Virus record (IMG/VR): IMGVR_UViG_3300046660_000488
Span: 124,001-188,000 of that record
Direction: 5' to 3' (one strand)
Length of the DNA stretch: 64,000 nucleotides
In this document: positions 1,803 to 61,087 of the stretch, piece after piece
Layout: every line of letters begins with the position of its first letter
How positions within the stretch are numbered: the first letter of the stretch is position 1
Notes under the pieces: model-generated
Seen by the model: the letters and a program-made list of their open reading frames with translations, nothing else
What the model was told of the DNA's origin: nothing
Databases searched by the model: none
Position numbers and translations under genes: made by a program

Positions 1803-1807
1803 TGCTG

Positions 1808-1813
1808 TATTTA
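1808..1813 (-). promoter_or_regulatory. T4-type late promoter TAAATA, 5 nt before ATG
   Basis: Minus strand reads gaTAAATAcagcaATG. Confidence 0.75.
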
Positions 1814-12400: not shown

Positions 12401-12406
12401 TAAATA
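12401..12406 (+). promoter_or_regulatory. T4-type late promoter TAAATA, 5 nt before ATG
   Basis: TAAATAttgcaATG. Confidence 0.75.
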
Positions 12407-12411
12407 TTGCA

Positions 12412-13710
12412 ATGCGCGCAGAACAACTCTTCGAAGACATTTTCCTGACCGACCGGATGTCGGCGTTCGAGGCTATCCGCCAGCATCCGAACCTGTTCGT
12501 GCACTTTTCGTCGGGCATCACCCGCGATGGTCAGCGCTCCCCTAGCGCTCCGAAATTCGGCATCAATCCGAGCAAGACCCATGGCGACCCGCCGGGCATC
12601 TATTTCTACTACAATCGCTGGCTCCTGAAATCGGACGACGTGTCTGACGGCCAGTACGGCGTCCACGGCTCCGAATATTTCTGGGTGTGCAACATCACCA
12701 AGACGTCCAACTCGCTCAACATCGGAGCGATGAAGAAAGAGGACGCCATTCGCCTTGCCAAGCGCAACGGCTGGGAAGACGAATACTACGACTGCATCCG
12801 CAAGGGCAACGTTCTCACGTCATCGCAGACCGCGAAGGCTGCGAAGACCGTTGGAGGCCAGTTCTGGGGCATTATGGACTATCTGGTCAACGAGGCGAAG
12901 ACGCACTCGTGGCTGAAGCTCTTGCGCGGCGTTGACGCGATTTTCGATTCCGGCCTCGGCATCATCAACTACCAAGAACCGGCTCAAGTCATCGTCCTGA
13001 ACAAGGCGCTGATCAAGATCGTCACCTTCGGTACGAACCGCGACAAGCAGGGCAACGTCGTCGCTCGCACCGTCAAAGCGTTCTCGGACAAGATCGGCGG
13101 AAGGTTCAGCTTCAAGTACAAGAGAGCGATCATCGACTTCGAGATCGATGGCGCCCCGGTGCAATGGAGCTTTGACGATTACGGCCGCAAGTCCACGTCG
13201 CAGTTCAAGGAGGGTTTCTGGGTCACTGACACTGAACCTCGCAGCATGGCGTCACAAGACGCCAATTGGTTCGGCGAAGGCCTGATGAAGTCGTACGAGG
13301 CCCTGAAAAGATACGGCAAGCTTGAGAAGACTGGGACGGTCTCCGAGTGGAGTCCACAGTCGGCCGTCGAATTCTCTAAGCAGTTGTTCACCAAGGCGCT
13401 TCTCTACAACCGCACCAACGTCAAAGACGGCGTTCTGATCATCACCGGCGACAACACCGGCGTGCTGTCTTCGTACAACCGGATCGAAGTAAATCACGAC
13501 GGTTCCGTGATGTTCCTGATCGATTTTTACAAGCGTGGTGGCGTTGAGGTTTGCAAGGCAGAAGCCACGTTCCCGGCCAAGACTCCGCGCAGCCATATCG
13601 TCGCCGAGCTTCGCAAGCAGTTGATTTCCTCGGCGAACCAAGCGGTCGAAAAGAAAGAAGTGGTCAGCCTCGAAAAGCTGGCCGCCGTCACAGGGCTCAT
13701 TTTGTCCTGA
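12412..13710 (+). CDS. Late protein, putative internal head protein with an N-terminal ART-like domain
   Basis: MRAEQLFE leader; FVHFS..KFGINP..DPPGIYFY. Confidence 0.5.
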   Translation: MRAEQLFEDIFLTDRMSAFEAIRQHPNLFVHFSSGITRDGQRSPSAPKFGINPSKTHGDPPGIYFYYNRWLLKSDDVSDGQYGVHGSEYFWVCNITKTSNSLNIGAMKKEDAIRLAKRNGWEDEYYDCIRKGNVLTSSQTAKAAKTVGGQFWGIMDYLVNEAKTHSWLKLLRGVDAIFDSGLGIINYQEPAQVIVLNKALIKIVTFGTNRDKQGNVVARTVKAFSDKIGGRFSFKYKRAIIDFEIDGAPVQWSFDDYGRKSTSQFKEGFWVTDTEPRSMASQDANWFGEGLMKSYEALKRYGKLEKTGTVSEWSPQSAVEFSKQLFTKALLYNRTNVKDGVLIITGDNTGVLSSYNRIEVNHDGSVMFLIDFYKRGGVEVCKAEATFPAKTPRSHIVAELRKQLISSANQAVEKKEVVSLEKLAAVTGLILS

Positions 13711-37961: not shown

Positions 37962-38569
37962 ATCGACCCACCCACCAAGACTGCACCCACGCAATCGAAC
38001 CGGTAGACCGACAGGTCTCCCGCCGTCGTGCTGTATTCGTTGCGCTTGATGACGAAGATGTTGGTGTCGAACGTCGGCACACCCGCACCCACGGCCTTGG
38101 TGATCAGCGTGAACTGCTGGCCAGTCTTCATGCCGGTCGGTGCCGGAATGGCGACATCGCCATCAACTTCCAGATATCCGATCTCGTAGTAAGCGTCCCA
38201 GACGGCCGCGCCGCCGCTCTGCGTCAGGGCGGTGAACTGTCGGGTCAGCGGGGTCCAGCCTTCAGCATAGCCCTCCAGCACGCCTGTGGCCTCGTTGTAG
38301 CGGATGGAGCCGTTGCGCGGCACATCGCTGGCCACGGTGACCCAAAGGCCGTCCACGGTGATCTCTACGCTTCCTGTCGTGGTGTTGAACCTGATTTGGC
38401 CCGGCTGTGCACCAAAGCGGCGCTGCTCTTCAGTTCCCTGCGGAAGGAACAAGGAGTCAGTCGCTCGCGACAAGTCGATCTCAGATTCCGTCGCCCAACT
38501 CTGCGAGGGATCGCGCAACAATGCTTTGGTGCGACGCTTGGTGAAAAGAATGTCCAGTGGGAAAACCAT
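37958..38569 (-). CDS. Late structural protein (tail fibre/baseplate-type repeats)
   Basis: TAAATA (38580-75)-N5-ATG; LP.GT..QR...GQIRFNTTT and GSIRYNEAT repeats. Confidence 0.6.
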   Translation of the reverse strand: MVFPLDILFTKRRTKALLRDPSQSWATESEIDLSRATDSLFLPQGTEEQRRFGAQPGQIRFNTTTGSVEITVDGLWVTVASDVPRNGSIRYNEATGVLEGYAEGWTPLTRQFTALTQSGGAAVWDAYYEIGYLEVDGDVAIPAPTGMKTGQQFTLITKAVGAGVPTFDTNIFVIKRNEYSTTAGDLSVYRFDCVGAVLVGGSI

Positions 38570-38636
38570 GGACTTATTTATTGCCGGTAATTAACCACGT
38601 ATTGTACAAGTAGAGTCATAGGAGACATTCATTTCT

Positions 38637-45448: not shown

Positions 45449-46801
45449 ATGATTCGAGGCATGGATTACTTCTACGACGCCCAAATCTATCGGTTCTTGG
45501 AGCAGATCGTTCGCGCCTATTCCGGTTTCAAATACATGACCGGATCGCGCGCGGGCCTGCCTCCCGTCGAGCAAGTCGTCCCTGTTCGGATGGCCCCCAC
45601 CGACCGACTGGTTGCTTCGATCATGAAGAACCTGTCGGACAACACCCTGTTCGCGGCGCCACTGATTGCGGTGTACATCACCGGCGTCAGCGGTCGCCGC
45701 GACGACCTCCAGAACCCGGCCCACGTGGACACTCGTCAAGTCGTCGAGCGCGCCATCGACCCGGTCTCCGGAGAGTATGAGCACGGTCGCGGCAAGTCCT
45801 ACACGGTCAAGCGCCTGATGGCCCTGCCGATGACGATGACCGTCAACGTGGACGTCTGGACGACGAACCTGAACCAGAAGCTTCAGCTTCTGGAGCAGAT
45901 CACCATCGCCACCTACCCGGACTTCGACATCCAGAACTCGAACAACGCGCTCGACTGGACGGCCCTGACCCGCGTGCAGGTTCGCGACGACATCACGTTC
46001 ACCTCGCGCGCCATCCCGATTGGAACGGCCGACGAGATCGACATCATGACGTTCACGCTGGACATCCCGTTCTGGCTGTCGCCGCCCGCGATCATCACGC
46101 AACAGATGCTCATCGAGCAAATCGTCACCGACGTCTCGGAAGAGAAACCCACACCGGGCATCGTCACCGATTCCGGACACTACGGCGATCCGATGTGGCA
46201 ACAGGTCACGACGCCGGGCAACTACCGGGTCAACGTCTCCGGCAACGAGATCACCCTGATCAATGACGCTGGCGAGCCCTTCGACGACCAAGGCTACCCC
46301 AACTCGTGGGAGCGCCTGATCAACCAGTACGGCGTGCTCCGTCCGGCGGAAAGCAAGCTGATCCTGAAGAACGAGATCGAAGAGCCGCTTGGCATCGTCG
46401 GAACGCTTCAACCCGATCCGACGCGACCGAACGTCCTGTTCTGGCAGATCGACCCCGACACGCTCCCGGTCAACACCTTGCAGCCGATTGACGGCGTCGT
46501 CGATCCGCACAAGTCGTTCCCCGGTGGTGGATTGCCCCAACCCGTCCCCGGCCAGCGCTATCTGATCGTCAGCGACATCGGAACCAGTCAGGTCTGGGGT
46601 GTGCTGAACGCCAAGTATGGCGACATCATCGAATACTCCACGCTGGGCTGGAACGTGGCGTTCAACGCCGCTCTGAACACCAGTTCCACGCAATACGTGC
46701 TCAACCTCGCGAAGGGCGCGCAGATGAAATGGACCGGTGAAGACTGGACTATGGCCATTGACGGCGAGTATCCACCGGGACTGTGGCGTCTAAACTTGTA
46801 A
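45449..46801 (+). CDS. Tail sheath stabilizer/completion protein (T4 gp15-like)
   Basis: YFYD.QI.RF..Q, VPVR.A..DR, P......VDVWT.N..QKLQLLEQI, IDI.T.T. Confidence 0.75.
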   Translation: MIRGMDYFYDAQIYRFLEQIVRAYSGFKYMTGSRAGLPPVEQVVPVRMAPTDRLVASIMKNLSDNTLFAAPLIAVYITGVSGRRDDLQNPAHVDTRQVVERAIDPVSGEYEHGRGKSYTVKRLMALPMTMTVNVDVWTTNLNQKLQLLEQITIATYPDFDIQNSNNALDWTALTRVQVRDDITFTSRAIPIGTADEIDIMTFTLDIPFWLSPPAIITQQMLIEQIVTDVSEEKPTPGIVTDSGHYGDPMWQQVTTPGNYRVNVSGNEITLINDAGEPFDDQGYPNSWERLINQYGVLRPAESKLILKNEIEEPLGIVGTLQPDPTRPNVLFWQIDPDTLPVNTLQPIDGVVDPHKSFPGGGLPQPVPGQRYLIVSDIGTSQVWGVLNAKYGDIIEYSTLGWNVAFNAALNTSSTQYVLNLAKGAQMKWTGEDWTMAIDGEYPPGLWRLNL

Positions 46802-48526: not shown

Positions 48527-49075
48527 ATGTCCACGTTCTACTGCGTTCGCAACACCCAGACTGGCGCCTACCTGATCCACTCCATCGGCTATACGACGCG
48601 GTGGGCCAAGGCTGGGCACGTCCATGGCTACACGACCGCCCTCGAAGCGGCCAAGATGCAGCGGGCCTACAACTGGGCGCGCCGCAACGTCGCCAACGAG
48701 AAACCGATCTACGGTGACAGCGAACTGGTCGTGCTCAACGCCGACGAGGCAGAAGATCATCAGGCCAAACGTCTGGCGGACATGCTCACCAAGATGATCG
48801 ACGGGGTCGCCTACGATCTGGTCAACGAAATCCTGATGAAGGGCAACCCGAAAGAGGTTCGCTACGTCCTGTCATTCGAGACCGATGAAGAGCCTGACCT
48901 GAAGAATGTCGGCGGCGTCAAGATCATCACCAAGAAAACCGACATGCCCAAATACAGCACGAAGAAATTCGCGCTTGGCGTCGCCTCCGAAAAAGACATG
49001 GTCTACCTGCGATTGAGTTTCGACGGTCTGGTTGGCGCGTGGGACATCATCGAATTCAAGAAAGTATCGTCATGA
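48527..49075 (+). CDS. Hypothetical protein of a paralogous family
   Basis: FYCVRNTQTGAY N-terminus; SEKDMVYLRL C-terminus. Confidence 0.6.
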   Translation: MSTFYCVRNTQTGAYLIHSIGYTTRWAKAGHVHGYTTALEAAKMQRAYNWARRNVANEKPIYGDSELVVLNADEAEDHQAKRLADMLTKMIDGVAYDLVNEILMKGNPKEVRYVLSFETDEEPDLKNVGGVKIITKKTDMPKYSTKKFALGVASEKDMVYLRLSFDGLVGAWDIIEFKKVSS

Positions 49076-50046
49076 GCAAACACGTCATCGTCACCGGCGG
49101 AGCCGGATACATCGGCTCTCACGTGTGTCTGAAGTTGAAGGAAGCCGGGTACAAACCGGTCGCGTTCGACAACCTGTACAACGGCCAAAAATCGGCGGTG
49201 AAATGGGGACCGTTCCGCGACGGCGACGTGCGAAATTACGAGTCGATCAAGTCGGCCATCAGCAAGTATGAGCCCGTGGCGGTAGTGCACATGGCTGGCC
49301 GGATCGAGGTTGGCGACTCCGTCCGTAACCCGGCCAATTACTACCACACCAACGTCGGTGGGACGGCCAACGTTCTGAAAGCCTGCGTGATGAACAACGT
49401 CCCGATGGTGTTTTCTTCCACCTGCGCGACATTCGGCTTCCCTATGGCCGTCCTCGACGAGACCCATCGCCAGCAGCCGCTGAACCCGTACGGCGACAGC
49501 AAGATGCTGGCCGAGCGGATGATGCTGGGGACCATGGAGAACAGCAAATGGCAGGGTATCATTCTGCGCTATTTCAACGCTGCTGGCGCCGATCCTGAAG
49601 GCCGCATCGGCGAAGACCACACGCCGGAGACGCACCTGATCCCGCTGCTCCTGCAAGCGGCCATCGACGGCACCCCGTTCGATGTCTACGGCACGAATTG
49701 GCGAACCGACGACGGAACCTGCGTGCGCGATTACGTCCACGTGATGGACCTCGCAGACGCCCACGTCGCGGCCGTGAAAAAGCTGGAAGGCGCGACTGAC
49801 GTGCTGGAGTTCGTCGATTACAATCTCGGCACGGGCAAAGGCTATTCAGTGTTCGAGGTGATCGCCACCGTCGAGCGGATCACCGGCAAGGAAATCAACT
49901 GGGTGGCGGCCGACCGGCGGCCGGGCGACGCCGATGCTCTGGTCGCCGATCCGTCGCGCGCGCGGCGCGGGCTCCACTGGGAAGCACAGTACGACCTCGA
50001 CGATATGGTCAAGCATGCCTATGCGTGGTTGACAAGCAAGTCGTAA
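49072..50046 (+). CDS. galE: UDP-glucose 4-epimerase
   Basis: VTGGAGYIGSH, NPYGDSK (YxxxK), LRYFNAAGA, RDYVHV.DLA.AH, RRPGD. Confidence 0.95.
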   Translation: MSKHVIVTGGAGYIGSHVCLKLKEAGYKPVAFDNLYNGQKSAVKWGPFRDGDVRNYESIKSAISKYEPVAVVHMAGRIEVGDSVRNPANYYHTNVGGTANVLKACVMNNVPMVFSSTCATFGFPMAVLDETHRQQPLNPYGDSKMLAERMMLGTMENSKWQGIILRYFNAAGADPEGRIGEDHTPETHLIPLLLQAAIDGTPFDVYGTNWRTDDGTCVRDYVHVMDLADAHVAAVKKLEGATDVLEFVDYNLGTGKGYSVFEVIATVERITGKEINWVAADRRPGDADALVADPSRARRGLHWEAQYDLDDMVKHAYAWLTSKS

Positions 50047-50353: not shown

Positions 50354-50668
50354 TTAGAACAGGATCACCGGGACCGTGGCGATCCCCAGTTCCTTGGCCG
50401 CGTTCGCGCGGTGGCGACCATCTTCCTTGCCATTGGCGTAGATGATCAGCGGATCGAGCGTCCGCCCGCTCTGGATGTGGTTCTTCAGGTCGTCGATATT
50501 GTCGCGCGAGACGTCGTCGATTTCGAGCGGCCGAACCTTGCTGAGGTATTCGTCCGGGGTCATGGACACCATCCTCCCACCGTTCTGCTGATAGTTGGCC
50601 TCGCCGTACCACTCATCGCGAGGGGCCAGCGGATAGGAACGGGCTTCGGTCAATTCGTGAAAGCGCAT
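50354..50668 (-). CDS. Late ParB/Srx-like small protein, putative internal head protein
   Basis: TAAATA (50678-73)-N4-ATG; MRFHELTE leader; DPLII...EDGRHRA..A..LG...VPV. Confidence 0.7.
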   Translation of the reverse strand: MRFHELTEARSYPLAPRDEWYGEANYQQNGGRMVSMTPDEYLSKVRPLEIDDVSRDNIDDLKNHIQSGRTLDPLIIYANGKEDGRHRANAAKELGIATVPVILF

Positions 50669-50712
50669 GCGGTATTTATTGACGCCGATTGACTGGTAAA
50701 CTAAATTAACGT

Positions 50713-50901: not shown

Positions 50902-52425
50902 ACGCAGCTAACGAAGACCTTCGACCATCGCTCCGAAGAGTCTTCCATCTATAACACATGGGAACAGGAAGGAGCTTTCGCGCCACGCGGAAATGGTCCT
51001 GCCTACTTCCTTCCGATGCCACCGCCGAACATCACCGGCATCCTGCACATGGGTCACGCCCTCTTCGCGACATTGCAGGACATTTCGACCCGATACCACC
51101 GGATGGCAGGCGATTGCACGCTCTGGCTCCCCGGCACGGATCACGCGGGTCTGGCGACGAACACCAAGATCACGGCGCTTATGCTGGAAGACGGGCTGAA
51201 CCCCGACGATCCGGAAGAATTCGACCTGTTCGCCGACATCTACAAGAAGAGCCTCCGCAACACGATCAGCGGCCAACTCCGTTCCTGCGGCGCCAGCGCC
51301 GACTGGAGCCGTGAGACGTTCACGCTGGACGAAGGGTACTCCCGCGCCGTTCTGACGGCCATGGAGCGCTGTGAGGCCGCTGGAATGCTCTATGGGCAGG
51401 ATGGGCAGTGGTGGCTCAACATGAAGCCTCTGGCTGACCGTCTGCTGGCCGAACTCGATGAAGGAAACATCGAGATCATCCCGGCCGGGCAGGAAGGCAC
51501 GCTCCGCAACTTCATCGAGAAAATCGAGCCGTGGTGCATCAGCCGCCAGATCAGGTGGGGCCACAAGCTCCCGATCTGGATCAGGGGCAATGCGCGCATG
51601 ATCTCGGCGGAATCGCCGGGCGGCGGCTGGAAGCAGGAAGACGGTTGCCTCGACACGTGGTTCTCGTCGGCCCTCTGGCCGTTCGCCACGCTGGGCTGGC
51701 CGGACGACACCGAGGACATGCGTCGGTTCTATCCGGCCGCGATGATCGAGACGGCTGACGACATCCTGTTCTTCTGGTGTGCTCGCATGCTGATGATGGG
51801 CCTTCTGCTCACCGATCAATTGCCGTTCAAGACGATCTTCCTGCACGGGCTGATCCGCGACAAGCACGGCAAGAAGATGAGCAAATCGGAAGGCAATGGC
51901 ATCGACCCGCTGGAGATCATCGACCGCTACGGCTGCGACAGCATGCGCTTTGCGCTGGCTGAATCCGCCACGCCCGGTCAGGACATGCGGATGTGGGACG
52001 ACAAATTCCAAGCCGGAAAGGCCCTGCGGACGAAGCTGTGGAACGCGGCGCGCTATGCGCTGAGCCACTACGACCGCATGGGACGGCCAGAGATCGAAGC
52101 TCTGGCCAACCTCAACCGCATGGACGACTTCCATTTCGTCAAGCGGACGCAGGAAGCCTCTGAGACCATCCAGATGGCCTACCGCGACCTTCGATACCAT
52201 GAGGCTGCACACGAGCTTCGTCGATACATTTTCGACGATCTGTGCGGCACGTTCATCGAAGCCACGAAGAGCCGTCTCTACGACGACAACGATCCGAAGG
52301 CCCTCAACACCTTGATGTGGGCTCTGGACATGACTTGCCGGATGGCTCACCCGATCATGCCGTTCGTCACCGAACGCATCCGGGCGACGTTCTCCGACAA
52401 GCCTTTGATTACTGACACTTTCTAA
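50902..52425 (+). CDS. valS: Minimal valyl-tRNA synthetase lacking the editing domain; start codon non-canonical or frameshifted
   Basis: KTFD..E..IY..WE..G.F, PPPNITG.LHMGHA, PGTDHAGLAT, WCISRQ..WGH, DTWFSSALWP, KMSKS.GN. Confidence 0.9.
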   Translation, partial: TQLTKTFDHRSEESSIYNTWEQEGAFAPRGNGPAYFLPMPPPNITGILHMGHALFATLQDISTRYHRMAGDCTLWLPGTDHAGLATNTKITALMLEDGLNPDDPEEFDLFADIYKKSLRNTISGQLRSCGASADWSRETFTLDEGYSRAVLTAMERCEAAGMLYGQDGQWWLNMKPLADRLLAELDEGNIEIIPAGQEGTLRNFIEKIEPWCISRQIRWGHKLPIWIRGNARMISAESPGGGWKQEDGCLDTWFSSALWPFATLGWPDDTEDMRRFYPAAMIETADDILFFWCARMLMMGLLLTDQLPFKTIFLHGLIRDKHGKKMSKSEGNGIDPLEIIDRYGCDSMRFALAESATPGQDMRMWDDKFQAGKALRTKLWNAARYALSHYDRMGRPEIEALANLNRMDDFHFVKRTQEASETIQMAYRDLRYHEAAHELRRYIFDDLCGTFIEATKSRLYDDNDPKALNTLMWALDMTCRMAHPIMPFVTERIRATFSDKPLITDTF

Positions 52426-52456
52426 ATACTTCGGGCCACGGTTTAGGTCGTGGCCC
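52423..52456 (+). promoter_or_regulatory. Late promoter overlapping the valS stop, followed by a GC hairpin
   Basis: TAAATA at 52423-28; GGGCCACG/CGTGGCCC at 52433-56. Confidence 0.55.
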
Positions 52457-52481: not shown

Positions 52482-53354
52482 ATGACCGTATTCAACAAAG
52501 TTGCGACCGAAATATTCGGTGAGCTTCCTCCGCAAAAGATGCGTCAGGTTGCTTCAGAAATCGAGCAATACTATTTCAGCAAGTACAAAGGTCCAACTGA
52601 GGTCCCCACTCGTTTTAGGGATTTCTTGCCGTATTGCAAAATCCACGCGCAGCCGTCGTACAAGCTGGCCTCCATCAGGCCTCACCAGTATCAGAACGAC
52701 TTGGCGAATAATCTGTCAGGCGTGGCCAATGGTCACCACCATGTGCTGATCAATAGCTCGCGGCAGATGGGCACGACGACGATGCTCATGCTGTTCCAAC
52801 TGTGGTCCGCGCTTCGCACGCCGCTGTCGGACATCCATTTCGCGACGTGGAACCTGAACAGCGCCCACGAAGGCCTCGACCGCATTCGTACGGTTCTGCC
52901 GCACTTGCCGCTCACGTTCGGTGAGGTCGCCTCGATGACGAAATCGGAACTCAAGTTCACCAACGGCTCGCGAATTTCCGGCGCCGCGATAGGCTCGAAC
53001 CACATTGCCGGAAAGCGGTTCTCCACCATCGTCATCGACAACGCCTCGATGGTGGGAATTCACGCTTCTCGGAAGCAAACCCTCGACGACATTTTGCACC
53101 AAGCGGCCGTCTACAACACGCGGGTCGTCATCGCGTCTCAGCCCGGCTATGTCGGCGAGTTCTTCCACAAACTGTGGGCCGATCCGGAAACCGACATCGG
53201 CGGCAAGAGCCGGTTGCAATTTGCCAAGGTCGTCCTGAACTGGCGATCCAACCCGCTGCAAAATACGGGCTGGGCCGCAAGCCATCGGGCGAACCTGCCG
53301 ACGAGCCAGTACCGTCAGGAATTCGAGAACGAGTTCATCTACAAAACAGCTTGA
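52482..53354 (+). CDS. Degenerate large-terminase (gp17) ATPase-domain paralog
   Basis: YQ motif, SRQMGTTT, F.NGS.I, IVIDN, ASQP, YRQEFENEF; no nuclease domain. Confidence 0.75.
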   Translation: MTVFNKVATEIFGELPPQKMRQVASEIEQYYFSKYKGPTEVPTRFRDFLPYCKIHAQPSYKLASIRPHQYQNDLANNLSGVANGHHHVLINSSRQMGTTTMLMLFQLWSALRTPLSDIHFATWNLNSAHEGLDRIRTVLPHLPLTFGEVASMTKSELKFTNGSRISGAAIGSNHIAGKRFSTIVIDNASMVGIHASRKQTLDDILHQAAVYNTRVVIASQPGYVGEFFHKLWADPETDIGGKSRLQFAKVVLNWRSNPLQNTGWAASHRANLPTSQYRQEFENEFIYKTA

Positions 53355-53610
53355 ACAGGGTGATGTCCCGGTCGCTGTGGACGATGTAGCGCCGGTGCGG
53401 GATGCTGCGGCGAAGCACGACGTCAGCCCGTTGGACCTTGCCCTTGGCGTTGTCCACCAGCCACTGGTAATAGGGCATCGCCACTTCGCTGATGGTCACG
53501 AAATCCACCCCGACCGGGAAATCGACGAACCACGGCTGGTTCTTTCCGCCGTGTCGGTCGATCACGAATGGCGAGGATTCGCATGACATACCATCAACGA
53601 ACGGACCCAT
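53335..53610 (-). CDS. Hypothetical protein
   Basis: C-terminal SDRDITLFKLF family motif. Confidence 0.55.
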   Translation of the reverse strand: MGPFVDGMSCESSPFVIDRHGGKNQPWFVDFPVGVDFVTISEVAMPYYQWLVDNAKGKVQRADVVLRRSIPHRRYIVHSDRDITLFKLFCR

Positions 53611-53626
53611 CGCACACTCGACCCAA

Positions 53627-53679
53627 TTTGGTTGACCAGATTACCCGATCCTCTATAATCTCGGCGTCAAGGAGACGCC
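53627..53679 (+). promoter_or_regulatory. Early promoter with an SD-covering hairpin
   Basis: TTTGG-TTGACC-N16-TATAAT; GGCGTC/GACGCC stem (53663-79). Confidence 0.7.
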
Positions 53680-54143: not shown

Positions 54144-54409
54144 CGACCAAGATGGCCACGACCGCCGAGTTCGCCATGTTCACCTCGCCGGTCTACTGGA
54201 TCAAGGTGTCGGCGACGGCGCCTCAAACCGAAGAGCAGACCTATGATCTGTGCAAGCGCTGGATCGAGTCCCGCTGCGGCGCCAGCATCTGCTACTTCGA
54301 CGACATCGAGAAGACGTTCTATTTCGGAAGCGAAGGCGACCGGATGATCTTCCGCATGTGGCTGGCCGACAATCCGACGTTCGAAGAATGGGACGCGGAG
54401 CTTAGCTGA
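54140..54409 (+). CDS. Hypothetical protein
   Basis: FYFGSEGDRMIFRM motif. Confidence 0.6.
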   Translation: MTTKMATTAEFAMFTSPVYWIKVSATAPQTEEQTYDLCKRWIESRCGASICYFDDIEKTFYFGSEGDRMIFRMWLADNPTFEEWDAELS

Positions 54410-55008
54410 TGTCCAAGTCGTTCTTCTACAAAATCCAAGACCCGACGACCGGCCTGTACTGGGGCGGCTACAAGACGATGTGCGGCGCGAAAGTCGGCAC
54501 ACGCTTCGTCGGCATGAACGAGGTCCAATTCGTCTACGACTGGATGGAGCGACACCACGGCGGATGCCCCGCGCACTGGGAAGTGGTCTACGTCGAGATA
54601 GAAGAGCACGAGCGCCAGAGGTTGTCCGGCGACAATCTCAAGATCATCACCAGCACCAACGCCGTGAGCAAAATCCTCACCAATGCCGGGTTCCGCCGCA
54701 CGTTAGATGCTGGCATCCATTTCAAGAAACTACGGGCGAATGGTGAGCTTCACGACTGGCTGGTCATGGCCGAGCTTACCGAAGAACTGGAATATGCCCG
54801 GTCGAAACCGAAGCGCGTCAAGTTTTTCGAAGCACTGAACATCCCGTCCGAGCACTATCGTCTTGAAAGTCCGCGCGTGGTCGTGTTCAACAACCATTCG
54901 GCCGCGACGATGGCCAAGTTGGGTGATGCGGCTGGCGCGATGATCGAGATCGAATACCTCTGCAAGAGACTCGCCAGCGTGATCAACGTCGCGGTGGAAT
55001 CAGTCTGA
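54409..55008 (+). CDS. Hypothetical protein of a paralogous family
   Basis: FYKIQDPTTGLYW N-terminus. Confidence 0.6.
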   Translation: MSKSFFYKIQDPTTGLYWGGYKTMCGAKVGTRFVGMNEVQFVYDWMERHHGGCPAHWEVVYVEIEEHERQRLSGDNLKIITSTNAVSKILTNAGFRRTLDAGIHFKKLRANGELHDWLVMAELTEELEYARSKPKRVKFFEALNIPSEHYRLESPRVVVFNNHSAATMAKLGDAAGAMIEIEYLCKRLASVINVAVESV

Positions 55009-55598
55009 TGCCCGACGTCGTCACCGTTGAAGAGTACAGCCTGCTGGACGAGGCGACCGGCAACTGTCTGCGCGTGTCAAGCTTCAAGCACTCGTTCGAC
55101 AAGACCGGCACGACGTGGAAAACACGTGCCGCCGCCATGCGGACTCTGATGAATTACACAGCCCGCCGGGCGCGTGTCGATAACCCGCATCTGCCCCAGA
55201 CGCTGAAGCTGAAGAAGCGCGTGTTCACGGTCGAAGATTGTGGCTATGAGGAAGGGTTCGACCATTCCTACATCCAAGCCGTCGTCCGTACACTGGACCA
55301 ATGCGACACGCGACCGATGAAGCAAACCAAGGAACAGTTTCCCACTGAACTTGAACGCATCCTCGAAGCCATCATCACCTTCGTCCGGAAAGACAAATAC
55401 TACCACTACTGCATCGAGGCCAAGCTTCGGGCAGAAATTCCAACGATCAAAGTGCGCGGCATGCACGTCTATGACGCCGGTCTTGCTCGCGTTTATTTCA
55501 TCACCCGCGAGGAAGACTTCATCATCATGCGGATGGCGCTCGCTGGTGAAATCATCCGCTACTATGACTTCAAGGCAGAGCGGGCGGTCATCCTGTGA
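55008..55598 (+). CDS. Hypothetical protein of a paralogous family
   Basis: YSLLDEATGNC; REEDFIIMRMAL. Confidence 0.6.
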   Translation: MPDVVTVEEYSLLDEATGNCLRVSSFKHSFDKTGTTWKTRAAAMRTLMNYTARRARVDNPHLPQTLKLKKRVFTVEDCGYEEGFDHSYIQAVVRTLDQCDTRPMKQTKEQFPTELERILEAIITFVRKDKYYHYCIEAKLRAEIPTIKVRGMHVYDAGLARVYFITREEDFIIMRMALAGEIIRYYDFKAERAVIL

Positions 55599-56188
55599 TC
55601 GAGGTTCGCTGGAGGATCATCGACCCAATATCCGGCAGGTTCTGGTCCGGCGAACGGACGTCCACGACGCAGATGGACTTCAACCGCTGCGTCAAACGCT
55701 ACCTGAGCCGGGACGGTGTGATCTACAAGACCGAGGCCCATGCCACCCACGCCTACCGCCAGTACGCGGCGCTGAAACTGGTCAGCATGCCGTTCTTGCC
55801 GGACGTCCAGATCATCGAAGAACACCTCCCGGTCGAGATCGCCAAGGCGTTCGTTCCGGATATCGACATCAACACCGACCTCCATTTTCAGGAACAGGTC
55901 TTCAAGGTCCGGTTTCCAGAAGGCGGCGCGGAGGATAACCGCGACGTCCTCGCCATCGCCCGCACGGTACGTGGGCGAGAGGACCGCGAGCGGTTCCAAT
56001 TCATCGTGAAGCGAGGGTGGAAGGACGAATTCCCTGTCAACCAGATCGGCGAGCACATCGTCGTCTCAAACTCGAAGGGTGGCCGCACCATCGCCATTAC
56101 TTCCGAAGCCGATCTGTTCTTCCTGCGTTGCTCGTTAGAAGAATGTAAAGCATACGACAGAATCACCGGTCGCAAAGTACTGCCTTGA
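55595..56188 (+). CDS. Hypothetical protein of a paralogous family
   Basis: WRIIDPISGRFW; SEADLFFLRCSL. Confidence 0.6.
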   Translation: MIEVRWRIIDPISGRFWSGERTSTTQMDFNRCVKRYLSRDGVIYKTEAHATHAYRQYAALKLVSMPFLPDVQIIEEHLPVEIAKAFVPDIDINTDLHFQEQVFKVRFPEGGAEDNRDVLAIARTVRGREDRERFQFIVKRGWKDEFPVNQIGEHIVVSNSKGGRTIAITSEADLFFLRCSLEECKAYDRITGRKVLP

Positions 56189-57300: not shown

Positions 57301-58761
57301 ATGACCAAAACCGTCGTCACACGCTTCGCCCCGTCGCCGACCGGCTACCTCCACATCGGAGGGGCACGCACGGCACTGTTCAACTACCTCTATGCCAAGC
57401 ATATGGGTGGCCAATTCGTGCTTCGGATCGAAGACACGGATCGCGAACGCTCGACGCCGGAATCCGTGCAGGCGATCTTCGACGGCCTGAAATGGCTGGG
57501 CATCCCGCACGACGGCGACGTCGTCTTCCAATCGGCGCGCGAGGCTCGCCACGTTGAGGCGGTGCAATACCTGCTCGACAAGGGCCGGGCCTATCGCTGC
57601 TACCTGACCAAGGACGAGCTTGAGGCCATGCGGGTCAAGGGCAAGGCCTTCCGCTCGCCGCACCGCGATGAGCCGGGCTGGGAGCCGCCGACCGATGACC
57701 GTCCGTTCGTTGTTCGTTTCAAGGGGCCGACCATCGGCCGCACGAACATCAACGACATGGTCAAGGGGAGCGAGGCCGCTGGCGTCTGGTTCGACAACTC
57801 GACGTTCGATGACCTGATCCTGCTGCGTTCAGACGGATCGCCGACCTACAACCTCGCGGTGGTGGTCGATGACCACGACATGGGTGTCACCCACGTGATC
57901 CGGGGCGACGACCATCTGAACAACGCTGGCCGTCAGACTCTGCTGTACGAAGCACTGGACTGGGAAATCCCGGTCTTCGGCCACGTGCCGCTGATCCTGA
58001 ACCCGGAAGGCAAGCCGCTGTCCAAGCGCAACGGCGACGCCGCCGTCTCCGACTATGCGGCTCTCGGCTACCTGCCGGAGGGCATGCGTAACTACCTCAC
58101 CCGTCTGGGCTGGGGTCACGGTGACGACGAAATCTTCTCGGACGCTCAGGCCATCGAGTGGTTCGACGTCGCCGATGTGGTGACTTCGCCCGCCCGCTTC
58201 GACTTCAAGAAGCTGGACGCAGTGAACCAACACTACATCAACGCGATGGATGACGTCACCCTGTCCAACATGGTGATCGACATCCTGAATTCGCGTCGCG
58301 ACGAGCCGTTGAACACCACCGCCGCCCATGCCGTGATGCGCGTTGTGCCCCTCATCAAGATGGGCACGCCGACCGTGGTGGCTCTGGCCAACGCGGCGGA
58401 TTTCGCGACGGTCCTCGACCAACCCCTGACCGACAAGGTCGCGGCGATGTTGGAGGACGACGTGGTCAAGCATCGCCTGTCGGTGCTGACCTCGGAGATC
58501 ATGCTGGCGCCGTGGAACGTTGATTCTCTGAACGAAGCCATCCGTGGCTACGTTCACGTCAACGATCTGAAGATGAAGGATGTCGGCCCGCTGCTGCGCG
58601 GTGTGCTGACCGGCCTTGATCGGGCACCGGACCTTGGCATCTGCCTTGTGGCCATCGGCCGTGAGCGTTCGCTGGCCCGTCTCAACGACGTGGTCAACCG
58701 CCTCACGTTCCCGCCGGTCAACAAGATGGATTCGCATCCAGCGGTTGACGGCCAAAACTAA
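57301..58761 (+). CDS. gltX: Glutamyl-tRNA synthetase
   Basis: VVTRFAPSPTGYLHIGGARTAL, LRIEDTD, PTYNLAVVVDD, VIRGDDH, LSKR; leaderless promoter TTGATT-N17-TAGGTT-N6-ATG. Confidence 0.97.
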   Translation: MTKTVVTRFAPSPTGYLHIGGARTALFNYLYAKHMGGQFVLRIEDTDRERSTPESVQAIFDGLKWLGIPHDGDVVFQSAREARHVEAVQYLLDKGRAYRCYLTKDELEAMRVKGKAFRSPHRDEPGWEPPTDDRPFVVRFKGPTIGRTNINDMVKGSEAAGVWFDNSTFDDLILLRSDGSPTYNLAVVVDDHDMGVTHVIRGDDHLNNAGRQTLLYEALDWEIPVFGHVPLILNPEGKPLSKRNGDAAVSDYAALGYLPEGMRNYLTRLGWGHGDDEIFSDAQAIEWFDVADVVTSPARFDFKKLDAVNQHYINAMDDVTLSNMVIDILNSRRDEPLNTTAAHAVMRVVPLIKMGTPTVVALANAADFATVLDQPLTDKVAAMLEDDVVKHRLSVLTSEIMLAPWNVDSLNEAIRGYVHVNDLKMKDVGPLLRGVLTGLDRAPDLGICLVAIGRERSLARLNDVVNRLTFPPVNKMDSHPAVDGQN

Positions 58762-59466: not shown

Positions 59467-60560
59467 CAGAAATCGACCCCCGGCTTGCGCTTGGTGACCG
59501 CCTTGGACAGGGCTTGCTTCTGTTTCTCGACGTCACCGTTCTTGAACGTGGTGTCCTTGGTGTTGTTGAGGAAGTCCCACAGCAGACGGTGAGCCGAAGT
59601 CCACTCCTGCTCTTGGTAATTGATCTCCTGCATCTGCCAGCCCTTGTCGATGCGGCGGAAGAGGACGCTGGGCGAATAGTCGGTCCGCAGGTAGTAGTCG
59701 CCAATGTCGGCGCTTTGCGGGAAGCTGGTTCCAGCGCCCAAGGTCTCGTAGCCGTTGGGCGGCACGCCGTCGCCAGCCCAGACGAACGGGTACTCGTCGC
59801 CAAGCTCGGAGCCCGGACGAATCCAGAAATGCTGGGTCTCGAAATTGCGATGCAGGAAATTGGCCTTGGCGCTCTCGATGATCGCCTCGTTGATCCCCAG
59901 ATCGGTTCCGATGGTGGTCATGATGTCGCCAATGCTTCCCTGATCCAGACCGAACGGATCGGTGGCCTGCTTGTCGAGGATGTCTTGGAATTCCTGCGAG
60001 GCGGTCATCGGCTTGGCCTTGATCCGCCAGATGTGGGCGAACCACGTGGACGAGTAACCGTCCGTCGCCTTGTGGGCGTCGGTGATCACATAGAACTTGT
60101 TGATGGCCGGGCGCTCTTCCCAGACCGTGGGGCCGGGGATGCTGTCGTCGCGAAGGTGGGGAAGCTCGATGACGTCGCCTTCGATCAGTCGGCGGCCGAG
60201 CATCGAGAGCATGTCGTTCAGGTGGAACTCGATCATCACCGTGTCGTCCTGAATGAACATGGCGTACTGGCTCATGCTCCCTTCGAGGTCGCCGACGTTG
60301 TACGTGCCGCGAAGCTCGTAGACCGTGTCGGAATATTTGCGGTCGCGGTTCTCCAGCAGCAACGGGTCTTGGATGCTGGTGATCCCACCGTTGGCCACGG
60401 CCGCGTTGGCGATCCCGTTGGCCGTCTGGTCGTAGACACCCTCGTAGAGGTGGCAGTAGACCGCTGTCCCCGAGATATCCATGTGCTCGGAGATCAGGTT
60501 ATCGATGAATTTGTAATCGAGGTCTTTGAGACCACTATTCCACATTGAGAGGCGCGCCAT
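59466..60560 (-). CDS. Neck protein (T4 gp14-like)
   Basis: TAAATA (60571-66)-N5-ATG; DY.FID..I.E...I.G, IQD.LLLENRDRKY, LGR.LIEGDVIELPHL, W..HIWR.K..P...SQE..DIL. Confidence 0.75.
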   Translation of the reverse strand: MARLSMWNSGLKDLDYKFIDNLISEHMDISGTAVYCHLYEGVYDQTANGIANAAVANGGITSIQDPLLLENRDRKYSDTVYELRGTYNVGDLEGSMSQYAMFIQDDTVMIEFHLNDMLSMLGRRLIEGDVIELPHLRDDSIPGPTVWEERPAINKFYVITDAHKATDGYSSTWFAHIWRIKAKPMTASQEFQDILDKQATDPFGLDQGSIGDIMTTIGTDLGINEAIIESAKANFLHRNFETQHFWIRPGSELGDEYPFVWAGDGVPPNGYETLGAGTSFPQSADIGDYYLRTDYSPSVLFRRIDKGWQMQEINYQEQEWTSAHRLLWDFLNNTKDTTFKNGDVEKQKQALSKAVTKRKPGVDF

Positions 60561-60568
60561 GCCTCTAT

Positions 60569-61087
60569 TTAGGTGGCCAGCATCCCATTAAACGGACTTC
60601 CCGTCAGGTCGATGATGATGTCCGGTCGTGGCGTCAGCCCGGTGCTGCGGCCGGTGTTCCAGTCGCGCACGATCTCATGAACGCTGGAGCACCACTGGCC
60701 ATCGGCTTGGACCGCGTTGGTGAAGACAATCTCCACCCGGTCAGCCCGCTTGTCCACGGCCAGAACACCGTCTTCGGTAGGTCTGGCGACCCATCCCTCA
60801 CCAGTCCAGCAGTAGTGGCAGACGCCCCATTGCTTGAACATGACGCGCATGGTGTCACAAAATCGGTCTCTGGATACAGCGTCAGGGAAATCGGTGAACA
60901 GTTGGAAAGTGTCGCCATTCCGACATACGACGAACAGCATAGGTCTCATCTGAGCCTGAACTTCGCAGGTGCTGAAGAAACCTTGGTGCATCTTGACGAC
61001 AGTGTCGTGCAAGGCGCGGTAATCCTTCATATCGTTAGGTATAGGCTTCACTGGCCCTATCCCAATATGGGAGAATTTCCGTTCCAT
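60569..61087 (-). CDS. Hypothetical protein
   Basis: AT-richer ORF; EGW...RVEIV. Confidence 0.5.
   Translation of the reverse strand: MERKFSHIGIGPVKPIPNDMKDYRALHDTVVKMHQGFFSTCEVQAQMRPMLFVVCRNGDTFQLFTDFPDAVSRDRFCDTMRVMFKQWGVCHYCWTGEGWVARPTEDGVLAVDKRADRVEIVFTNAVQADGQWCSSVHEIVRDWNTGRSTGLTPRPDIIIDLTGSPFNGMLAT

What the first reader, a model, noticed from the sequence alone, without database searches (positions are those of the whole stretch)
52482..53354. Catalytically dead terminase ATPase domain: a candidate decoy
Seen: a gp17-like N-domain with every catalytic motif altered (Walker A GKT to GTT, Walker B DE to DN, motif III T-T-P to SQP) and no nuclease domain, yet an intact ORF behind a TAAATA. 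Known: large terminase is the trigger sensed by several Avs/STAND defences. Inference: a decoy that binds sensors without activating them, or a packaging regulator.
Basis: partly seen in the sequence, partly recalled or inferred. Interest (0 to 1): 0.65.

Follow-up and report, generated by a model that had tools for sequence, protein, structure and literature searches.

The report
Catalytically dead terminase ATPase-domain paralog
A 578-kb soil phage carries, besides its normal DNA-packaging enzyme, a shortened copy of that enzyme's motor domain that has lost the ATP-burning residues and the DNA-cutting half; it belongs to a family I could not find described, seen in several very large phages, and its role (packaging modulator or immune decoy) is still open.

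Summary
Window 52482-53354 (+) is an intact 290-aa ORF that folds like the T4 gp17 ATPase domain (AF2 pLDDT 93.6; Foldseek 2o0j E 1.6e-15). The Walker A Lys is Thr, the catalytic Glu is Asn, motif III is ASQP, and the ORF stops at the hinge before the nuclease domain.

The genome is a complete 578-kb phage. Its real, intact TerL (531 aa, GKTT/DE/TSTP plus nuclease) lies 258 kb away, so this is neither the terminase nor half of a split one.

It is not an orphan. An exhaustive HMM search found about 70 clusters of 215-320-aa proteins with the same architecture. Of 67 aligned, 58 lack both a P-loop Lys and the catalytic Glu. Members sit on 469-578-kb phage genomes, including cultured Sinorhizobium phage Phosso, where the gene is annotated 'terminase small subunit'.

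The family is patchy among close relatives, fast-evolving and without a conserved neighbour. All ten members checked lie behind a TAAATA, a likely T4-type late promoter that also precedes TerL.

It is most likely a non-catalytic TerL mimic that acts by binding. The decoy idea is untested, and published data show that a terminase ATPase domain alone activates Avs2 and Upx.

The parts
52422..52429 (+). CTAAATAC, a TAAATA-type promoter-like motif (probable T4-type late promoter). It overlaps the TAA stop of the upstream ValRS-like gene and lies 59 nt before the ATG.
   Evidence: The motif is enriched about 2-fold, lies mostly in intergenic DNA and is oriented towards starts. The same CTAAATACTT lies about 62 nt before the real TerL. 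All 9 other family members checked have TAAATA 36-81 nt upstream. The genome encodes a gp55-like late sigma factor.
52433..52456 (+). 9-bp GC-rich hairpin (GGGCCACGG / TCGTGGCCC, 6-nt loop) between the TAAATA and the ATG. It may be a 5'-UTR stem-loop of this gene or the 3' end structure of the upstream gene. No T-run follows it.
   Evidence: RNA fold -19.5 kcal/mol, z -2.0 against shuffles. The consensus scan does not call it an intrinsic terminator.
52482..53354 (+). CDS of 290 aa (P0001): a TerL N-terminal ATPase-domain paralog without a nuclease domain.
52689..52694 (+). Tyr70-Gln71, the adenine-binding 'YQ' motif, retained.
   Evidence: Aligned to gp17 YQ. Gln is present in 62 of 67 family members.
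52758..52781 (+). Degenerate Walker A, SRQMGTTT (residues 93-100). Arg94, Gln95, Gly97 and Thr99 are kept. The canonical Lys is Thr98, and there is no relocated Lys.
53007..53009 (+). Ala176, at the position of the trans-acting Arg finger ('RG', 11 residues before the catalytic site).
   Evidence: R or K in 48 of 67 family members, Ala in P0001. Assignment rests on spacing to P74-26 R139/E150 (title; PMC6379665) and is an inference.
53028..53042 (+). Degenerate Walker B, IVIDN (residues 183-187). Asp186 is kept. The catalytic Glu is Asn187.
53130..53144 (+). Motif III region, IASQP (residues 217-221), in place of TSTP/TTTP.

Best explanation
Shown:
- The gene encodes a folded, nuclease-less paralog of the ATPase domain of the phage's own T4-type large terminase.
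- It has no P-loop lysine (canonical or relocated), no catalytic glutamate and, in this copy, no trans arginine finger.
- It is a divergent member of a family of such proteins carried by some 469-578-kb phages. Each of the four genomes that could be searched whole (G000, G005, G006, Phosso) also has a complete TerL elsewhere.

Inferred:
- By analogy with gp17 and lambda gpA mutants it should neither hydrolyse ATP nor cut DNA.
- It is transcribed late, from the same TAAATA-type promoter class as TerL and the head genes.
- It therefore most likely works stoichiometrically, as a TerL look-alike that occupies a site normally contacted by the TerL ATPase domain.

My leading version, about 0.35 on its own, is a non-essential modulator of the packaging machine that binds the portal, the TerL ring or TerL's nuclease domain. 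Such a protein could time or limit motor assembly, or poison a competitor's motor. The immune-sensor version is listed as a rival. Which partner it binds is not resolved.
For: Identity and fold.

Real TerL is intact elsewhere, and there are only two TerL-N-like ORFs and no free nuclease in the genome.

Family:
- 705 hits in the exhaustive HMM search. The best are 250-310-aa proteins aligned end to end.
- Of 67 aligned members, 58 lack both Lys and Glu.
- Bona fide TerLs in the same search keep either GK[ST] or the relocated K-x-R-Q Lys, and keep Glu in 52 of 53.
- The family stays conserved at R94 (99%), Q95 (96%), G97 (100%), NGS (94-99%) and Q71 (93%). This shows constraint on the pocket architecture despite the loss of catalysis.

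Purifying selection in other members:
- P0003 against Phosso P0153: pN 0.34 against a saturated pS of 0.75.
- P0004: one synonymous difference in 873 nt while the flanks differ by 0.5-0.8%.

Late co-expression.

Accessory nature:
- Present in G000, G005, G006, Phosso and the 522-kb and 576-kb contigs.
- Absent at E<=0.01 from complete or near-complete relatives G002, G003, G004, G007 and G009.

The catalytic Glu and Walker A residues are required in TerLs: all changes of lambda E179 are lethal, with motif table (PMC6379665); gp17 E256 is the catalytic glutamate (PMC5737356).
Against: - No binding partner was shown. The TerL + P0001 complex prediction gave no verdict.
- No RNA or proteome data exist for this phage.
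- There is no conserved neighbouring gene to suggest a partner.
- Absence from the closest relatives argues against any core packaging role.
- P0001 itself departs from several residues that are 80-94% conserved in the family (G61K, G226E, H257N, R260Q, G273P). It scores near the bottom of the family (210 bits against 197-366). This copy may therefore be under relaxed constraint.
- Near-invariance of the P-loop Arg/Gln/Gly and the adenine Gln could mean a ligand is still bound, so 'inert' is not proven.
Confidence: 0.55

Rival explanations
1. Immune decoy or sponge. The dead ATPase domain binds TerL-sensing host receptors (Avs1-3, Upx) without triggering them, or titrates them, and so protects the real TerL made at the same time.
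For: - TerL's ATPase domain is the surface read by Avs2, Avs3 and Upx (PMC13601566). The model also resembles the Avs3-bound PhiV-1 terminase, 8dgc_E, E 1.6e-8.
- The gene has a patchy, non-syntenic, fast-evolving accessory profile. P0001 is 21% identical to the Phosso homolog, while MCP is 77.5% and TerL 57.5% identical.
- It is co-expressed with TerL from the same promoter type.
- EcAvs2 activation uses an ATP held in the terminase site that contacts a 'bridging' ATP, and mutating the bridging contacts weakens defence. A mimic that cannot hold ATP-Mg might bind without completing that interface. This step is inference.
- The authors of PMC13601566 themselves suggest TerL-like non-terminase activators may be anti-defence proteins.
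Against: [quoted passage not shown]
- Walker B/nuclease Asp-to-Ala mutants still activate Upx in most cases.
- T4 vs.8, a stand-alone TerL-like ATPase, is toxic with EcAvs2.
- My searches of the held library found no natural decoy for an Avs sensor.
- Strong conservation of interior P-loop residues is not obviously needed for surface mimicry.
- Nothing was tested here.
Confidence: 0.2
2. A relic: a TerL duplicate that lost function and is drifting. The ORF is still open only by chance.
For: - P0001 has lost every catalytic residue plus the Arg finger, and departs from several near-invariant family positions.
- It has no relative closer than 31% identity among about 15 billion proteins, so selection on this lineage cannot be measured.
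- The gene is dispensable in close relatives.
Against: - The ORF is a full-length 290 aa and ends at the same domain boundary as the family.
- Its GC3 of 0.74 is typical of the genome's genes.
- It keeps 26 of 34 strongly conserved columns.
- It gives a confident fold and keeps the promoter motif.
- The same architecture persists in about 70 clusters that are under 50% identical, with purifying selection where it can be measured.
Confidence: 0.1
3. Still an enzyme: an ATPase or nucleotide-binding switch with a non-canonical site. The Walker A Arg would replace Lys, and another residue would act as the base.
For: - The adenine Gln, P-loop Arg/Gln/Gly, Walker A Thr/Ser and Walker B Asp are highly conserved in the family.
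- Some genuine TerLs lack the canonical Lys.
Against: - Those TerLs carry a relocated Lys (LK[SA]RQ) and keep Asp-Glu. The short family has neither in 58 of 67 members.
- All substitutions of the catalytic Glu are lethal in lambda TerL (PMC6379665).
Confidence: 0.08
4. Small-terminase substitute, as the Phosso homolog is annotated: it recognises the packaging site and recruits TerL.
For: - The Phosso CDS XYS97501.1 is labelled 'terminase small subunit'.
- No T4 gp16-type TerS (PF11053) was found in this genome.
- The gene is expressed late.
Against: - There is no similarity to any TerS family in Pfam, PHROGs or NCBIfam. All hits are to TerL.
- The fold is the TerL ATPase domain, not a TerS ring.
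- It is absent from complete close relatives, which must still package DNA.
Confidence: 0.04
5. Half of a split, functional terminase.
For: It covers exactly the N-terminal domain.
Against: - A complete 531-aa TerL with all motifs and the nuclease domain is present.
- No stand-alone nuclease domain exists in the genome.
- The catalytic residues are missing.
Confidence: 0.01

Closest known systems
T4 gp17 N-terminal ATPase domain (PDB 2o0h/2o0j/3cpe), and this phage's own TerL (G000:C1:435275-436870)
   Same: It has the same fold across the whole N-domain, subdomains I and II (Foldseek E 1.6e-15, 276 columns). It shares the YQ adenine motif, Walker A Arg-Gln-x-Gly, Walker B Asp, the NGS strand and the EFxxEF end of the domain.
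   Different: It has no Walker A Lys, no catalytic Glu, an altered motif III, no trans Arg finger and no C-terminal RNase H-like nuclease domain. It is 26% identical to its own TerL and lies 258 kb away from it.
T4 vs.8 (NP_049732, phrog_1488), a stand-alone TerL-ATPase-like protein reported to activate EcAvs2 (PMC13601566)
   Same: It is a separate phage gene that encodes only a terminase-ATPase-like domain, sits beside a normal TerL, and has unknown function. It is restricted to certain phage lineages.
   Different: vs.8 keeps Walker A GKS and Walker B DE, is shorter (219 aa) and is an early-region gene. The two are not the same family: hhalign against the family profile gives probability 0.4%, and the family does not hit phrog_1488.
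Sinorhizobium phage Phosso CDS XYS97501.1 (PV764938.1:249808-250653), annotated 'terminase small subunit'
   Same: It is a family member. It is 281 aa and collinear end to end with P0001 (E 1e-10). Its motifs are degenerate (GRSMGITM, FADN, TGTP). TAAATA lies 36 nt upstream. A full TerL sits elsewhere in a 469-kb genome.
   Different: It is only 21% identical, lies in another genomic neighbourhood (two genes from the MCP) and belongs to another branch of the family. The TerS annotation is not supported by any family search.
TerLs with a 'deviant' Walker A (lambda gpA type, KSARVGYS)
   Same: They also lack the Lys at the canonical GK[ST] position while keeping the P-loop Arg (PMC6379665 Table 1).
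   Different: They carry a relocated Lys two residues before the Arg, keep Asp-Glu and the nuclease domain, and are active terminases. P0001 and 58 of 67 family members have neither a Lys nor the Glu.

Membership tests
Large terminase TerL, T4 gp17 type (Terminase_6N + Terminase_6C) | ASCE ATPase fold of the N-terminal domain | tested here: met
   AF2 pLDDT 93.6. Foldseek 2o0j E 1.6e-15, TMq 0.72. phrog_2 E 8.6e-11.
Large terminase TerL, T4 gp17 type (Terminase_6N + Terminase_6C) | Walker A lysine, canonical GK[ST] or relocated K-x-R-Q | tested here: not met
   The motif is SRQMGTTT preceded by LINS, with no Lys at either site.
Large terminase TerL, T4 gp17 type (Terminase_6N + Terminase_6C) | Catalytic glutamate after the Walker B Asp | tested here: not met
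   IVIDN: Asn187 stands in place of Glu.
Large terminase TerL, T4 gp17 type (Terminase_6N + Terminase_6C) | C-terminal RNase H-like nuclease domain | tested here: not met
   The ORF stops at the domain hinge. There is no nuclease-like ORF nearby or elsewhere in the genome apart from the real TerL.
Large terminase TerL, T4 gp17 type (Terminase_6N + Terminase_6C) | Pfam Terminase_6N above the gathering score | tested here: not met
   P0001 has no Pfam hit even at E<=10. Family members P0004, P0005, P0006, P0010, P0038 and P0008 (weak) carry precomputed PF03237 hits.
Short nuclease-less TerL-N paralogs of huge phages (alignment A2, defined here) | 215-320 aa, collinear with the whole TerL N-domain, ending at EFxxEF | tested here: met
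   The top hits align 8-287 of P0001 to 18-288 of a 290-aa protein. The family HMM built without P0001 gives 210 bits.
Short nuclease-less TerL-N paralogs of huge phages (alignment A2, defined here) | No P-loop Lys and no catalytic Glu, with Arg-Gln-x-Gly, the adenine Gln and NGS kept | tested here: met
   58 of 67 members lack both, and P0001 is one of them. R94, Q95, G97, Q71 and N161-G162-S163 are present.
Short nuclease-less TerL-N paralogs of huge phages (alignment A2, defined here) | Encoded on a very large phage genome that also has a complete TerL | tested here: met
   G000 is 578 kb with TerL at 435275-436870. The same holds in G005, G006 and Phosso. Members also lie on 522-kb and 576-kb contigs.
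Short nuclease-less TerL-N paralogs of huge phages (alignment A2, defined here) | TAAATA motif 36-81 nt upstream of the start | tested here: met
   9 of 9 other members have it, and P0001 has it at -59.
Short nuclease-less TerL-N paralogs of huge phages (alignment A2, defined here) | Single evolutionary origin (one clade) | tested here: inconclusive
   FastTree gives a clade of 69-75 with SH 0.83. The IQ-TREE quick tree needs 13 changes. The AU test does not reject monophyly of the 68 dead short proteins, p 0.207.
T4 vs.8-like stand-alone terminase-like ATPases (phrog_1488) | Sequence/profile membership and intact Walker A/B | tested here: not met
   hhalign of A2 against vs.8 gives probability 0.4%. 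There is no phrog_1488 hit. vs.8 has GKS and DE.
Small terminase (TerS) | Match to a TerS family or fold | tested here: not met
   Only TerL families are hit in PHROGs, and nothing is hit in Pfam or NCBIfam. The fold is the TerL ATPase domain.
Phage anti-defence decoy of TerL sensors (Avs1-3, Upx) | Binds the sensor without activating it and lowers defence | not testable with these tools
   This needs co-expression toxicity and plaque assays. The literature shows ATPase domains activate Avs2 and Upx.

The most novel reading that the evidence does not exclude
The late-expressed, catalytically dead TerL ATPase-domain paralogs of phages larger than 450 kb are natural 'pseudo-terminases' evolved as molecular mimics of the phage's most widely sensed protein. 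They would bind TerL-sensing immune receptors (Avs1-3, Upx) but, unable to hold ATP-Mg, fail to complete the activating interface, and so shield the real terminase. That would be the first phage decoy of a pattern-recognition STAND sensor. A second novel reading is a dominant-negative motor subunit used against co-infecting phages.
Probability: 0.2. Interest if true: 0.85.

Novelty: new variant of a known kind. Interest (0 to 1): 0.55.

Why it matters
The large terminase is the most conserved protein of tailed phages and a main target of bacterial pattern-recognition immunity. A recurrent paralog that keeps the fold but has shed both activities points to a second, non-enzymatic use of the terminase ATPase fold.

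If it modulates the packaging motor, it would be a new regulatory layer specific to the largest known phages. If it acts on Avs or Upx sensors, it would be a new class of counter-defence.

There are practical consequences. Such genes are mis-annotated: 'terminase small subunit' in Phosso, 'three terminases' in AP-J-162. They can also confuse TerL-based phylogenies and marker counts of huge phages. A cultured host-phage pair, Sinorhizobium meliloti and Phosso, carries a family member, so the question can be tested directly.

Tried and rejected
- **Close relatives of P0001.** Megablast of 10 kb against cultured phages gave no match. The word-index protein search and the pattern scan of viral contigs found only the protein itself and one distant hit. 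No relative above 31% identity exists, so dN/dS for P0001 itself cannot be computed.
- **Complex prediction TerL + P0001.** Score 0.00, no verdict. This is evidence neither for nor against binding.
- **Expression.** The only full holder is a rhizosphere metagenome that may be the source sample. No RNA run holds the stretch. Read laying was not used, because contigs alone could show neither transcripts nor rare variants.
- **T4 vs.8 as the same family.** Rejected.
- **TerS.** No PF11053 match in the genome. This is a negative that proves little.
- **Conserved neighbour or operon partner.** Eight other contexts were inspected (six with enough flanking genes to judge) and nothing recurs. The gene is often a lone gene opposed to its neighbours.
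- **ORF directly downstream of family member P0038.** It is not a nuclease domain.
- **Synteny with Phosso.** The MCP and Rad50-like genes are conserved, but the short paralogs sit in different places.
- **Monophyly of the family.** Not resolved.
- **dN/dS for P0003 against P0153.** dS is saturated, so only pN well below pS can be stated.
- **Literature.** Searches for terminase paralogs, decoys or pseudo-terminases found no description of this family.
- **Three same-sized tandem ORFs downstream (54409-56188).** No BLASTP similarity to each other.
Full report
**1. Where the window lies**

The window is bases 124001-188000 of a 578,292-bp virus record with direct terminal repeats, rated 100% complete. 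GC content is about 59%. The only run that holds the stretch in full is a rhizosphere metagenome.

The major capsid protein of this genome is 77.5% identical to that of the cultured 469-kb Sinorhizobium phage Phosso, and the TerL is 57.5% identical. This is therefore a soil 'huge phage' related to rhizobial phages.

**2. The observation**

The ORF runs from ATG 52482 to the stop ending at 53354 and encodes 290 aa, P0001. Pfam gives nothing. Other searches place it firmly with large terminases:
- PHROGs hits only large-terminase families, phrog_2 at E 8.6e-11.
- A PDB sequence search finds T4 gp17, E 3e-5, aligning residues 51-244 to gp17 149-332.
- An AlphaFold2 model built on the family alignment is confident, pLDDT 93.6 and pTM 0.88.
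- Its best structural matches are the gp17 ATPase domain (2o0j, E 1.6e-15, TMq 0.72, 276 columns), then the P74-26, T7, D6E, Sf6 and HK97 terminases.

- SRQLGKTT becomes SRQMGTTT.
- IDE becomes IDN.
- TTTP becomes ASQP.

Two further losses are visible. There is no lambda-type relocated lysine before the P-loop Arg. The residue 11 positions upstream of the catalytic site, where P74-26 has its R139 finger and most relatives have Arg or Lys, is Ala.

Not everything is altered. The adenine Gln, the Walker A Arg (T4 R162, the 'arginine toggle' of PMC6379665), Gly, Thr and the Walker B Asp remain.

The protein ends right after the EFxxEF motif that closes the N-domain in TerL, so the nuclease domain is cleanly absent.

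**3. The real terminase**

A profile search of the whole genome finds one strong TerL at G000:C1:435275-436870, 258 kb from the candidate. It is 531 aa with ARQMGKTT, LYLDE, TSTP and a full C-terminal domain.

A six-frame search with the family profile finds only these two TerL-N-like ORFs. TBLASTN with the TerL C-domain finds no second nuclease. The candidate is 26% identical to the TerL N-domain. It is thus an old paralog, not the terminase and not half of a split one.

**4. It is a family**

The word-index search found no relatives. The exhaustive HMM search of 1.84 billion cluster representatives gave 705 hits. The best are not terminases but proteins of 250-310 aa aligned end to end at about 30% identity, for example P0004 (290 aa, E 2.6e-24).

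I aligned 67 of them as alignment A2. The counts are:
- None has the canonical Lys, and six have a Lys at or next to the relocated site.
- The catalytic Glu position is Asn 29, Asp 17, Ser 6, Gln 5, Thr 2, Gly 1 and Glu 7.
- 58 of 67 lack both a Lys and the Glu.

The full-length TerLs recovered by the same search behave differently. They keep Glu in 52 of 53. They have either GK[ST] or the relocated Lys in LK[SA]RQxG[ILV]ST. This matches the lambda KSARVGYS type tabulated in PMC6379665. Loss of the canonical Lys alone would therefore not prove inactivity. Loss of both possible lysines and the glutamate does make hydrolysis very unlikely, because all changes of the lambda catalytic Glu are lethal.

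The family remains strongly conserved elsewhere: R94 99%, Q95 96%, G97 100%, N-G-S 94-99%, Q71 93%, and a W..HP.RD..W...G...F..EFEC.F tail.

Its profile scores this phage's own TerL (309 bits) higher than P0001 (210 bits). The family therefore derives from the TerL lineage of this phage group, and P0001 is one of its more divergent members. P0001 keeps 26 of 34 strongly conserved columns, against a median of 30.

Tree analyses cluster the dead short proteins strongly but do not settle a single origin. FastTree gives a clade with SH 0.83. The IQ-TREE quick tree needs 13 changes. The AU test does not reject monophyly, p 0.21.

**5. Who carries it**

Every member whose contig is long enough to judge sits on a very large phage genome:
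- G000 (578 kb).
- A 576-kb sediment contig (P0010).
- A 522-kb contig (P0004, seen in 125 index blocks).
- G005 (500 kb, a 349-aa member).
- G006 (480 kb, P0003).
- Cultured phage Phosso (469 kb, P0153).

In Phosso the gene is annotated 'terminase small subunit', which no family search supports.

In G000, G005, G006 and Phosso a complete TerL is present as well. Yet the profile finds no member in several relatives at E<=0.01. These are the complete or near-complete G002, G003, G004, G007 and G009, and the incomplete G001, G008 and G010. Several of these have TerLs closer to G000 (62-75% identity) than G005 or G006 do.

P0001 and the Phosso protein are 21% identical and not syntenic, while the MCPs are 77.5% identical. 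No neighbouring gene recurs in the eight other contexts inspected, only six of which carry enough flanking genes to judge. The gene is often a lone unit opposed to its neighbours.

This is the profile of an accessory, fast-evolving gene, not of a core packaging component.

**6. Is it decaying?**

For P0001 itself no relative is close enough for dN/dS. Indirect evidence speaks against decay:
- The ORF is full length with the family's exact boundaries.
- Its codon-position GC matches that of TerL.
- It gives a confident fold.
- Its promoter-like motif is retained.

Elsewhere in the family, selection is visible. P0003 against P0153 (50% identity) gives pN 0.34 against a saturated pS of 0.75. Three environmental copies of P0004 differ by a single synonymous site, while their flanks differ by 0.5-0.8%.

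P0001 does depart from several near-invariant family residues (G61K, G226E, H257N, R260Q) and has lost the Arg finger that 48 of 67 members keep. Relaxed constraint in this particular lineage therefore cannot be excluded.

**7. Regulation**

The genome has 180 copies against about 86 expected. 128 touch the 13% of the genome that my crude gene calls leave intergenic. 59% lie within 100 nt upstream of a same-strand start, against 21% for its reverse complement and 14-51% for other AT-rich hexamers. The consensus is cTAAATAc.

The same CTAAATACTT precedes the real TerL by about 62 nt and the candidate by 59 nt. An ATAAATA precedes the Rad50-like/MCP pair. All nine other family members checked, from different phages, have TAAATA 36-81 nt upstream.

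The genome encodes a gp55-like late sigma factor at G000:C1:301326-302186 (phrog_12791, E 1.7e-80). The T4 late promoter is TATAAATA (established knowledge). The motif is therefore very probably a late promoter and the family a set of late genes co-expressed with TerL. This is inference, because no transcript data exist.

A stable 9-bp hairpin lies between the motif and the ATG.

**8. What it does**

The shown facts are the fold, the loss of catalytic and nuclease functions, a separate intact TerL, family-level conservation, patchy distribution and a late-type promoter. They support a protein that acts by binding as a TerL look-alike.

Two partner classes are plausible. The first is the packaging machine itself: the portal, the TerL ring, or TerL's own C-domain. 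Pseudo-ATPase paralogs of ring motors commonly serve as regulatory subunits. Most family members keep the trans Arg finger, the P-loop architecture and the conserved tail of the N-domain that TerL shares, which a surface decoy would not obviously need.

The second is host TerL sensors. PMC13601566 shows the following:
- EcAvs2 and Upx recognise the ATPase domain alone.
- Walker B Asp-to-Ala mutants still activate Upx in most cases.
- T4 vs.8, a stand-alone TerL-like ATPase with intact motifs, activates EcAvs2.
- EcAvs2 uses the terminase-bound ATP to hold a bridging ATP.

These data cut both ways. A look-alike is readily bound by such sensors, but binding normally activates them. A mimic unable to hold ATP might bind unproductively, which is speculation.

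I put about 0.35 on a packaging-side role, about 0.2 on an immune decoy, about 0.1 on a relic, and the rest on other roles. The one complex prediction I could run (TerL + P0001) gave no verdict.

**9. Comparison and novelty**

It works like a pseudoenzyme copy of TerL's motor domain. It is not a TerL, because three defining features were tested and not met. It is not a TerS, and it is not a vs.8 homolog.

I found no description of this family in the held literature. The AP-J-162 paper merely lists 'three terminases'.

I rate it a new variant of a known kind: a catalytically dead, nuclease-less TerL-N family of huge phages. This gene is a divergent member of it.

Noticed in passing
whole genome; in the window e.g. 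1802-1813(-), 12401-12412, 38569-38580(-), 50668-50678(-), 60560-60571(-): TAAATA very often sits only 10-12 nt before the ATG (TAAATAcagcaATG, TAAATAccgcATG). The distance histogram has two peaks, 10-20 nt (39 genes) and 30-40 nt (28 genes). If TAAATA is a T4-type late -10 element, many late mRNAs would be leaderless or nearly so.
   Followed up: partly
window 51016-52425 (+): A valyl-tRNA-synthetase-like gene of only 469 aa lies directly upstream of the candidate. It has the HIGH and KMSKS motifs and the anticodon-binding domain. It matches valS models in two stretches (the best covering about positions 352-702) and stays below their cut-offs (505 bits against 704). It appears to lack the CP1 editing domain.
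   Followed up: partly
window 57301-58761 (+): A full-length bacterial-type glutamyl-tRNA synthetase (TIGR00464, 458 bits, above cut-off). Together with the ValRS-like gene it makes a cluster of translation genes around the candidate.
   Followed up: no
window 45449-46801 (+) and 49069-50046 (+): A T4 gp15-like tail sheath stabiliser (PF16724, E 3e-7) and an NAD-dependent sugar epimerase (PF01370, E 2e-47). Family member P0004 also lies next to sugar-nucleotide and glycosyltransferase genes.
   Followed up: no
G000:C1:301326-302186 (outside the window; L134:327-1187): A gp55-like late sigma factor (phrog_12791, E 1.7e-80; phrog_234, E 1.2e-20).
   Followed up: partly
L001:282-761 and 659-1246 (G000:C1:434191-435155), just upstream of the real TerL: Two small ORFs (159 and 195 aa) share a C-terminal motif with each other (...PETFEP...KYA.I.A). 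The second also matches the C-terminal 31 residues of the Phosso major capsid protein (61% identity). No recognisable TerS lies upstream of TerL.
   Followed up: no
proteins P0130, P0139, P0140 (hits): Several full-length TerLs recovered by the search carry large insertions exactly inside the Walker A motif, between G-K and T-T. They end in ...HN and look like inteins.
   Followed up: no
window 53335-53610 (-): A 91-aa ORF with a good coding signature (GC3 0.78) converges on the candidate and overlaps its last 20 nt. A strong sigma-70-like site (TTGACC-16-TATAAT) lies at 53632-53659 (+).
   Followed up: no
PV764938.1 (Sinorhizobium phage Phosso) 249808-250653; AP-J-162 paper PMC11242549: The Phosso family member is annotated 'terminase small subunit'. 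The related jumbo phage AP-J-162 is reported to have 'three terminases'. These are probably mis-annotations of this paralog family.
   Followed up: partly
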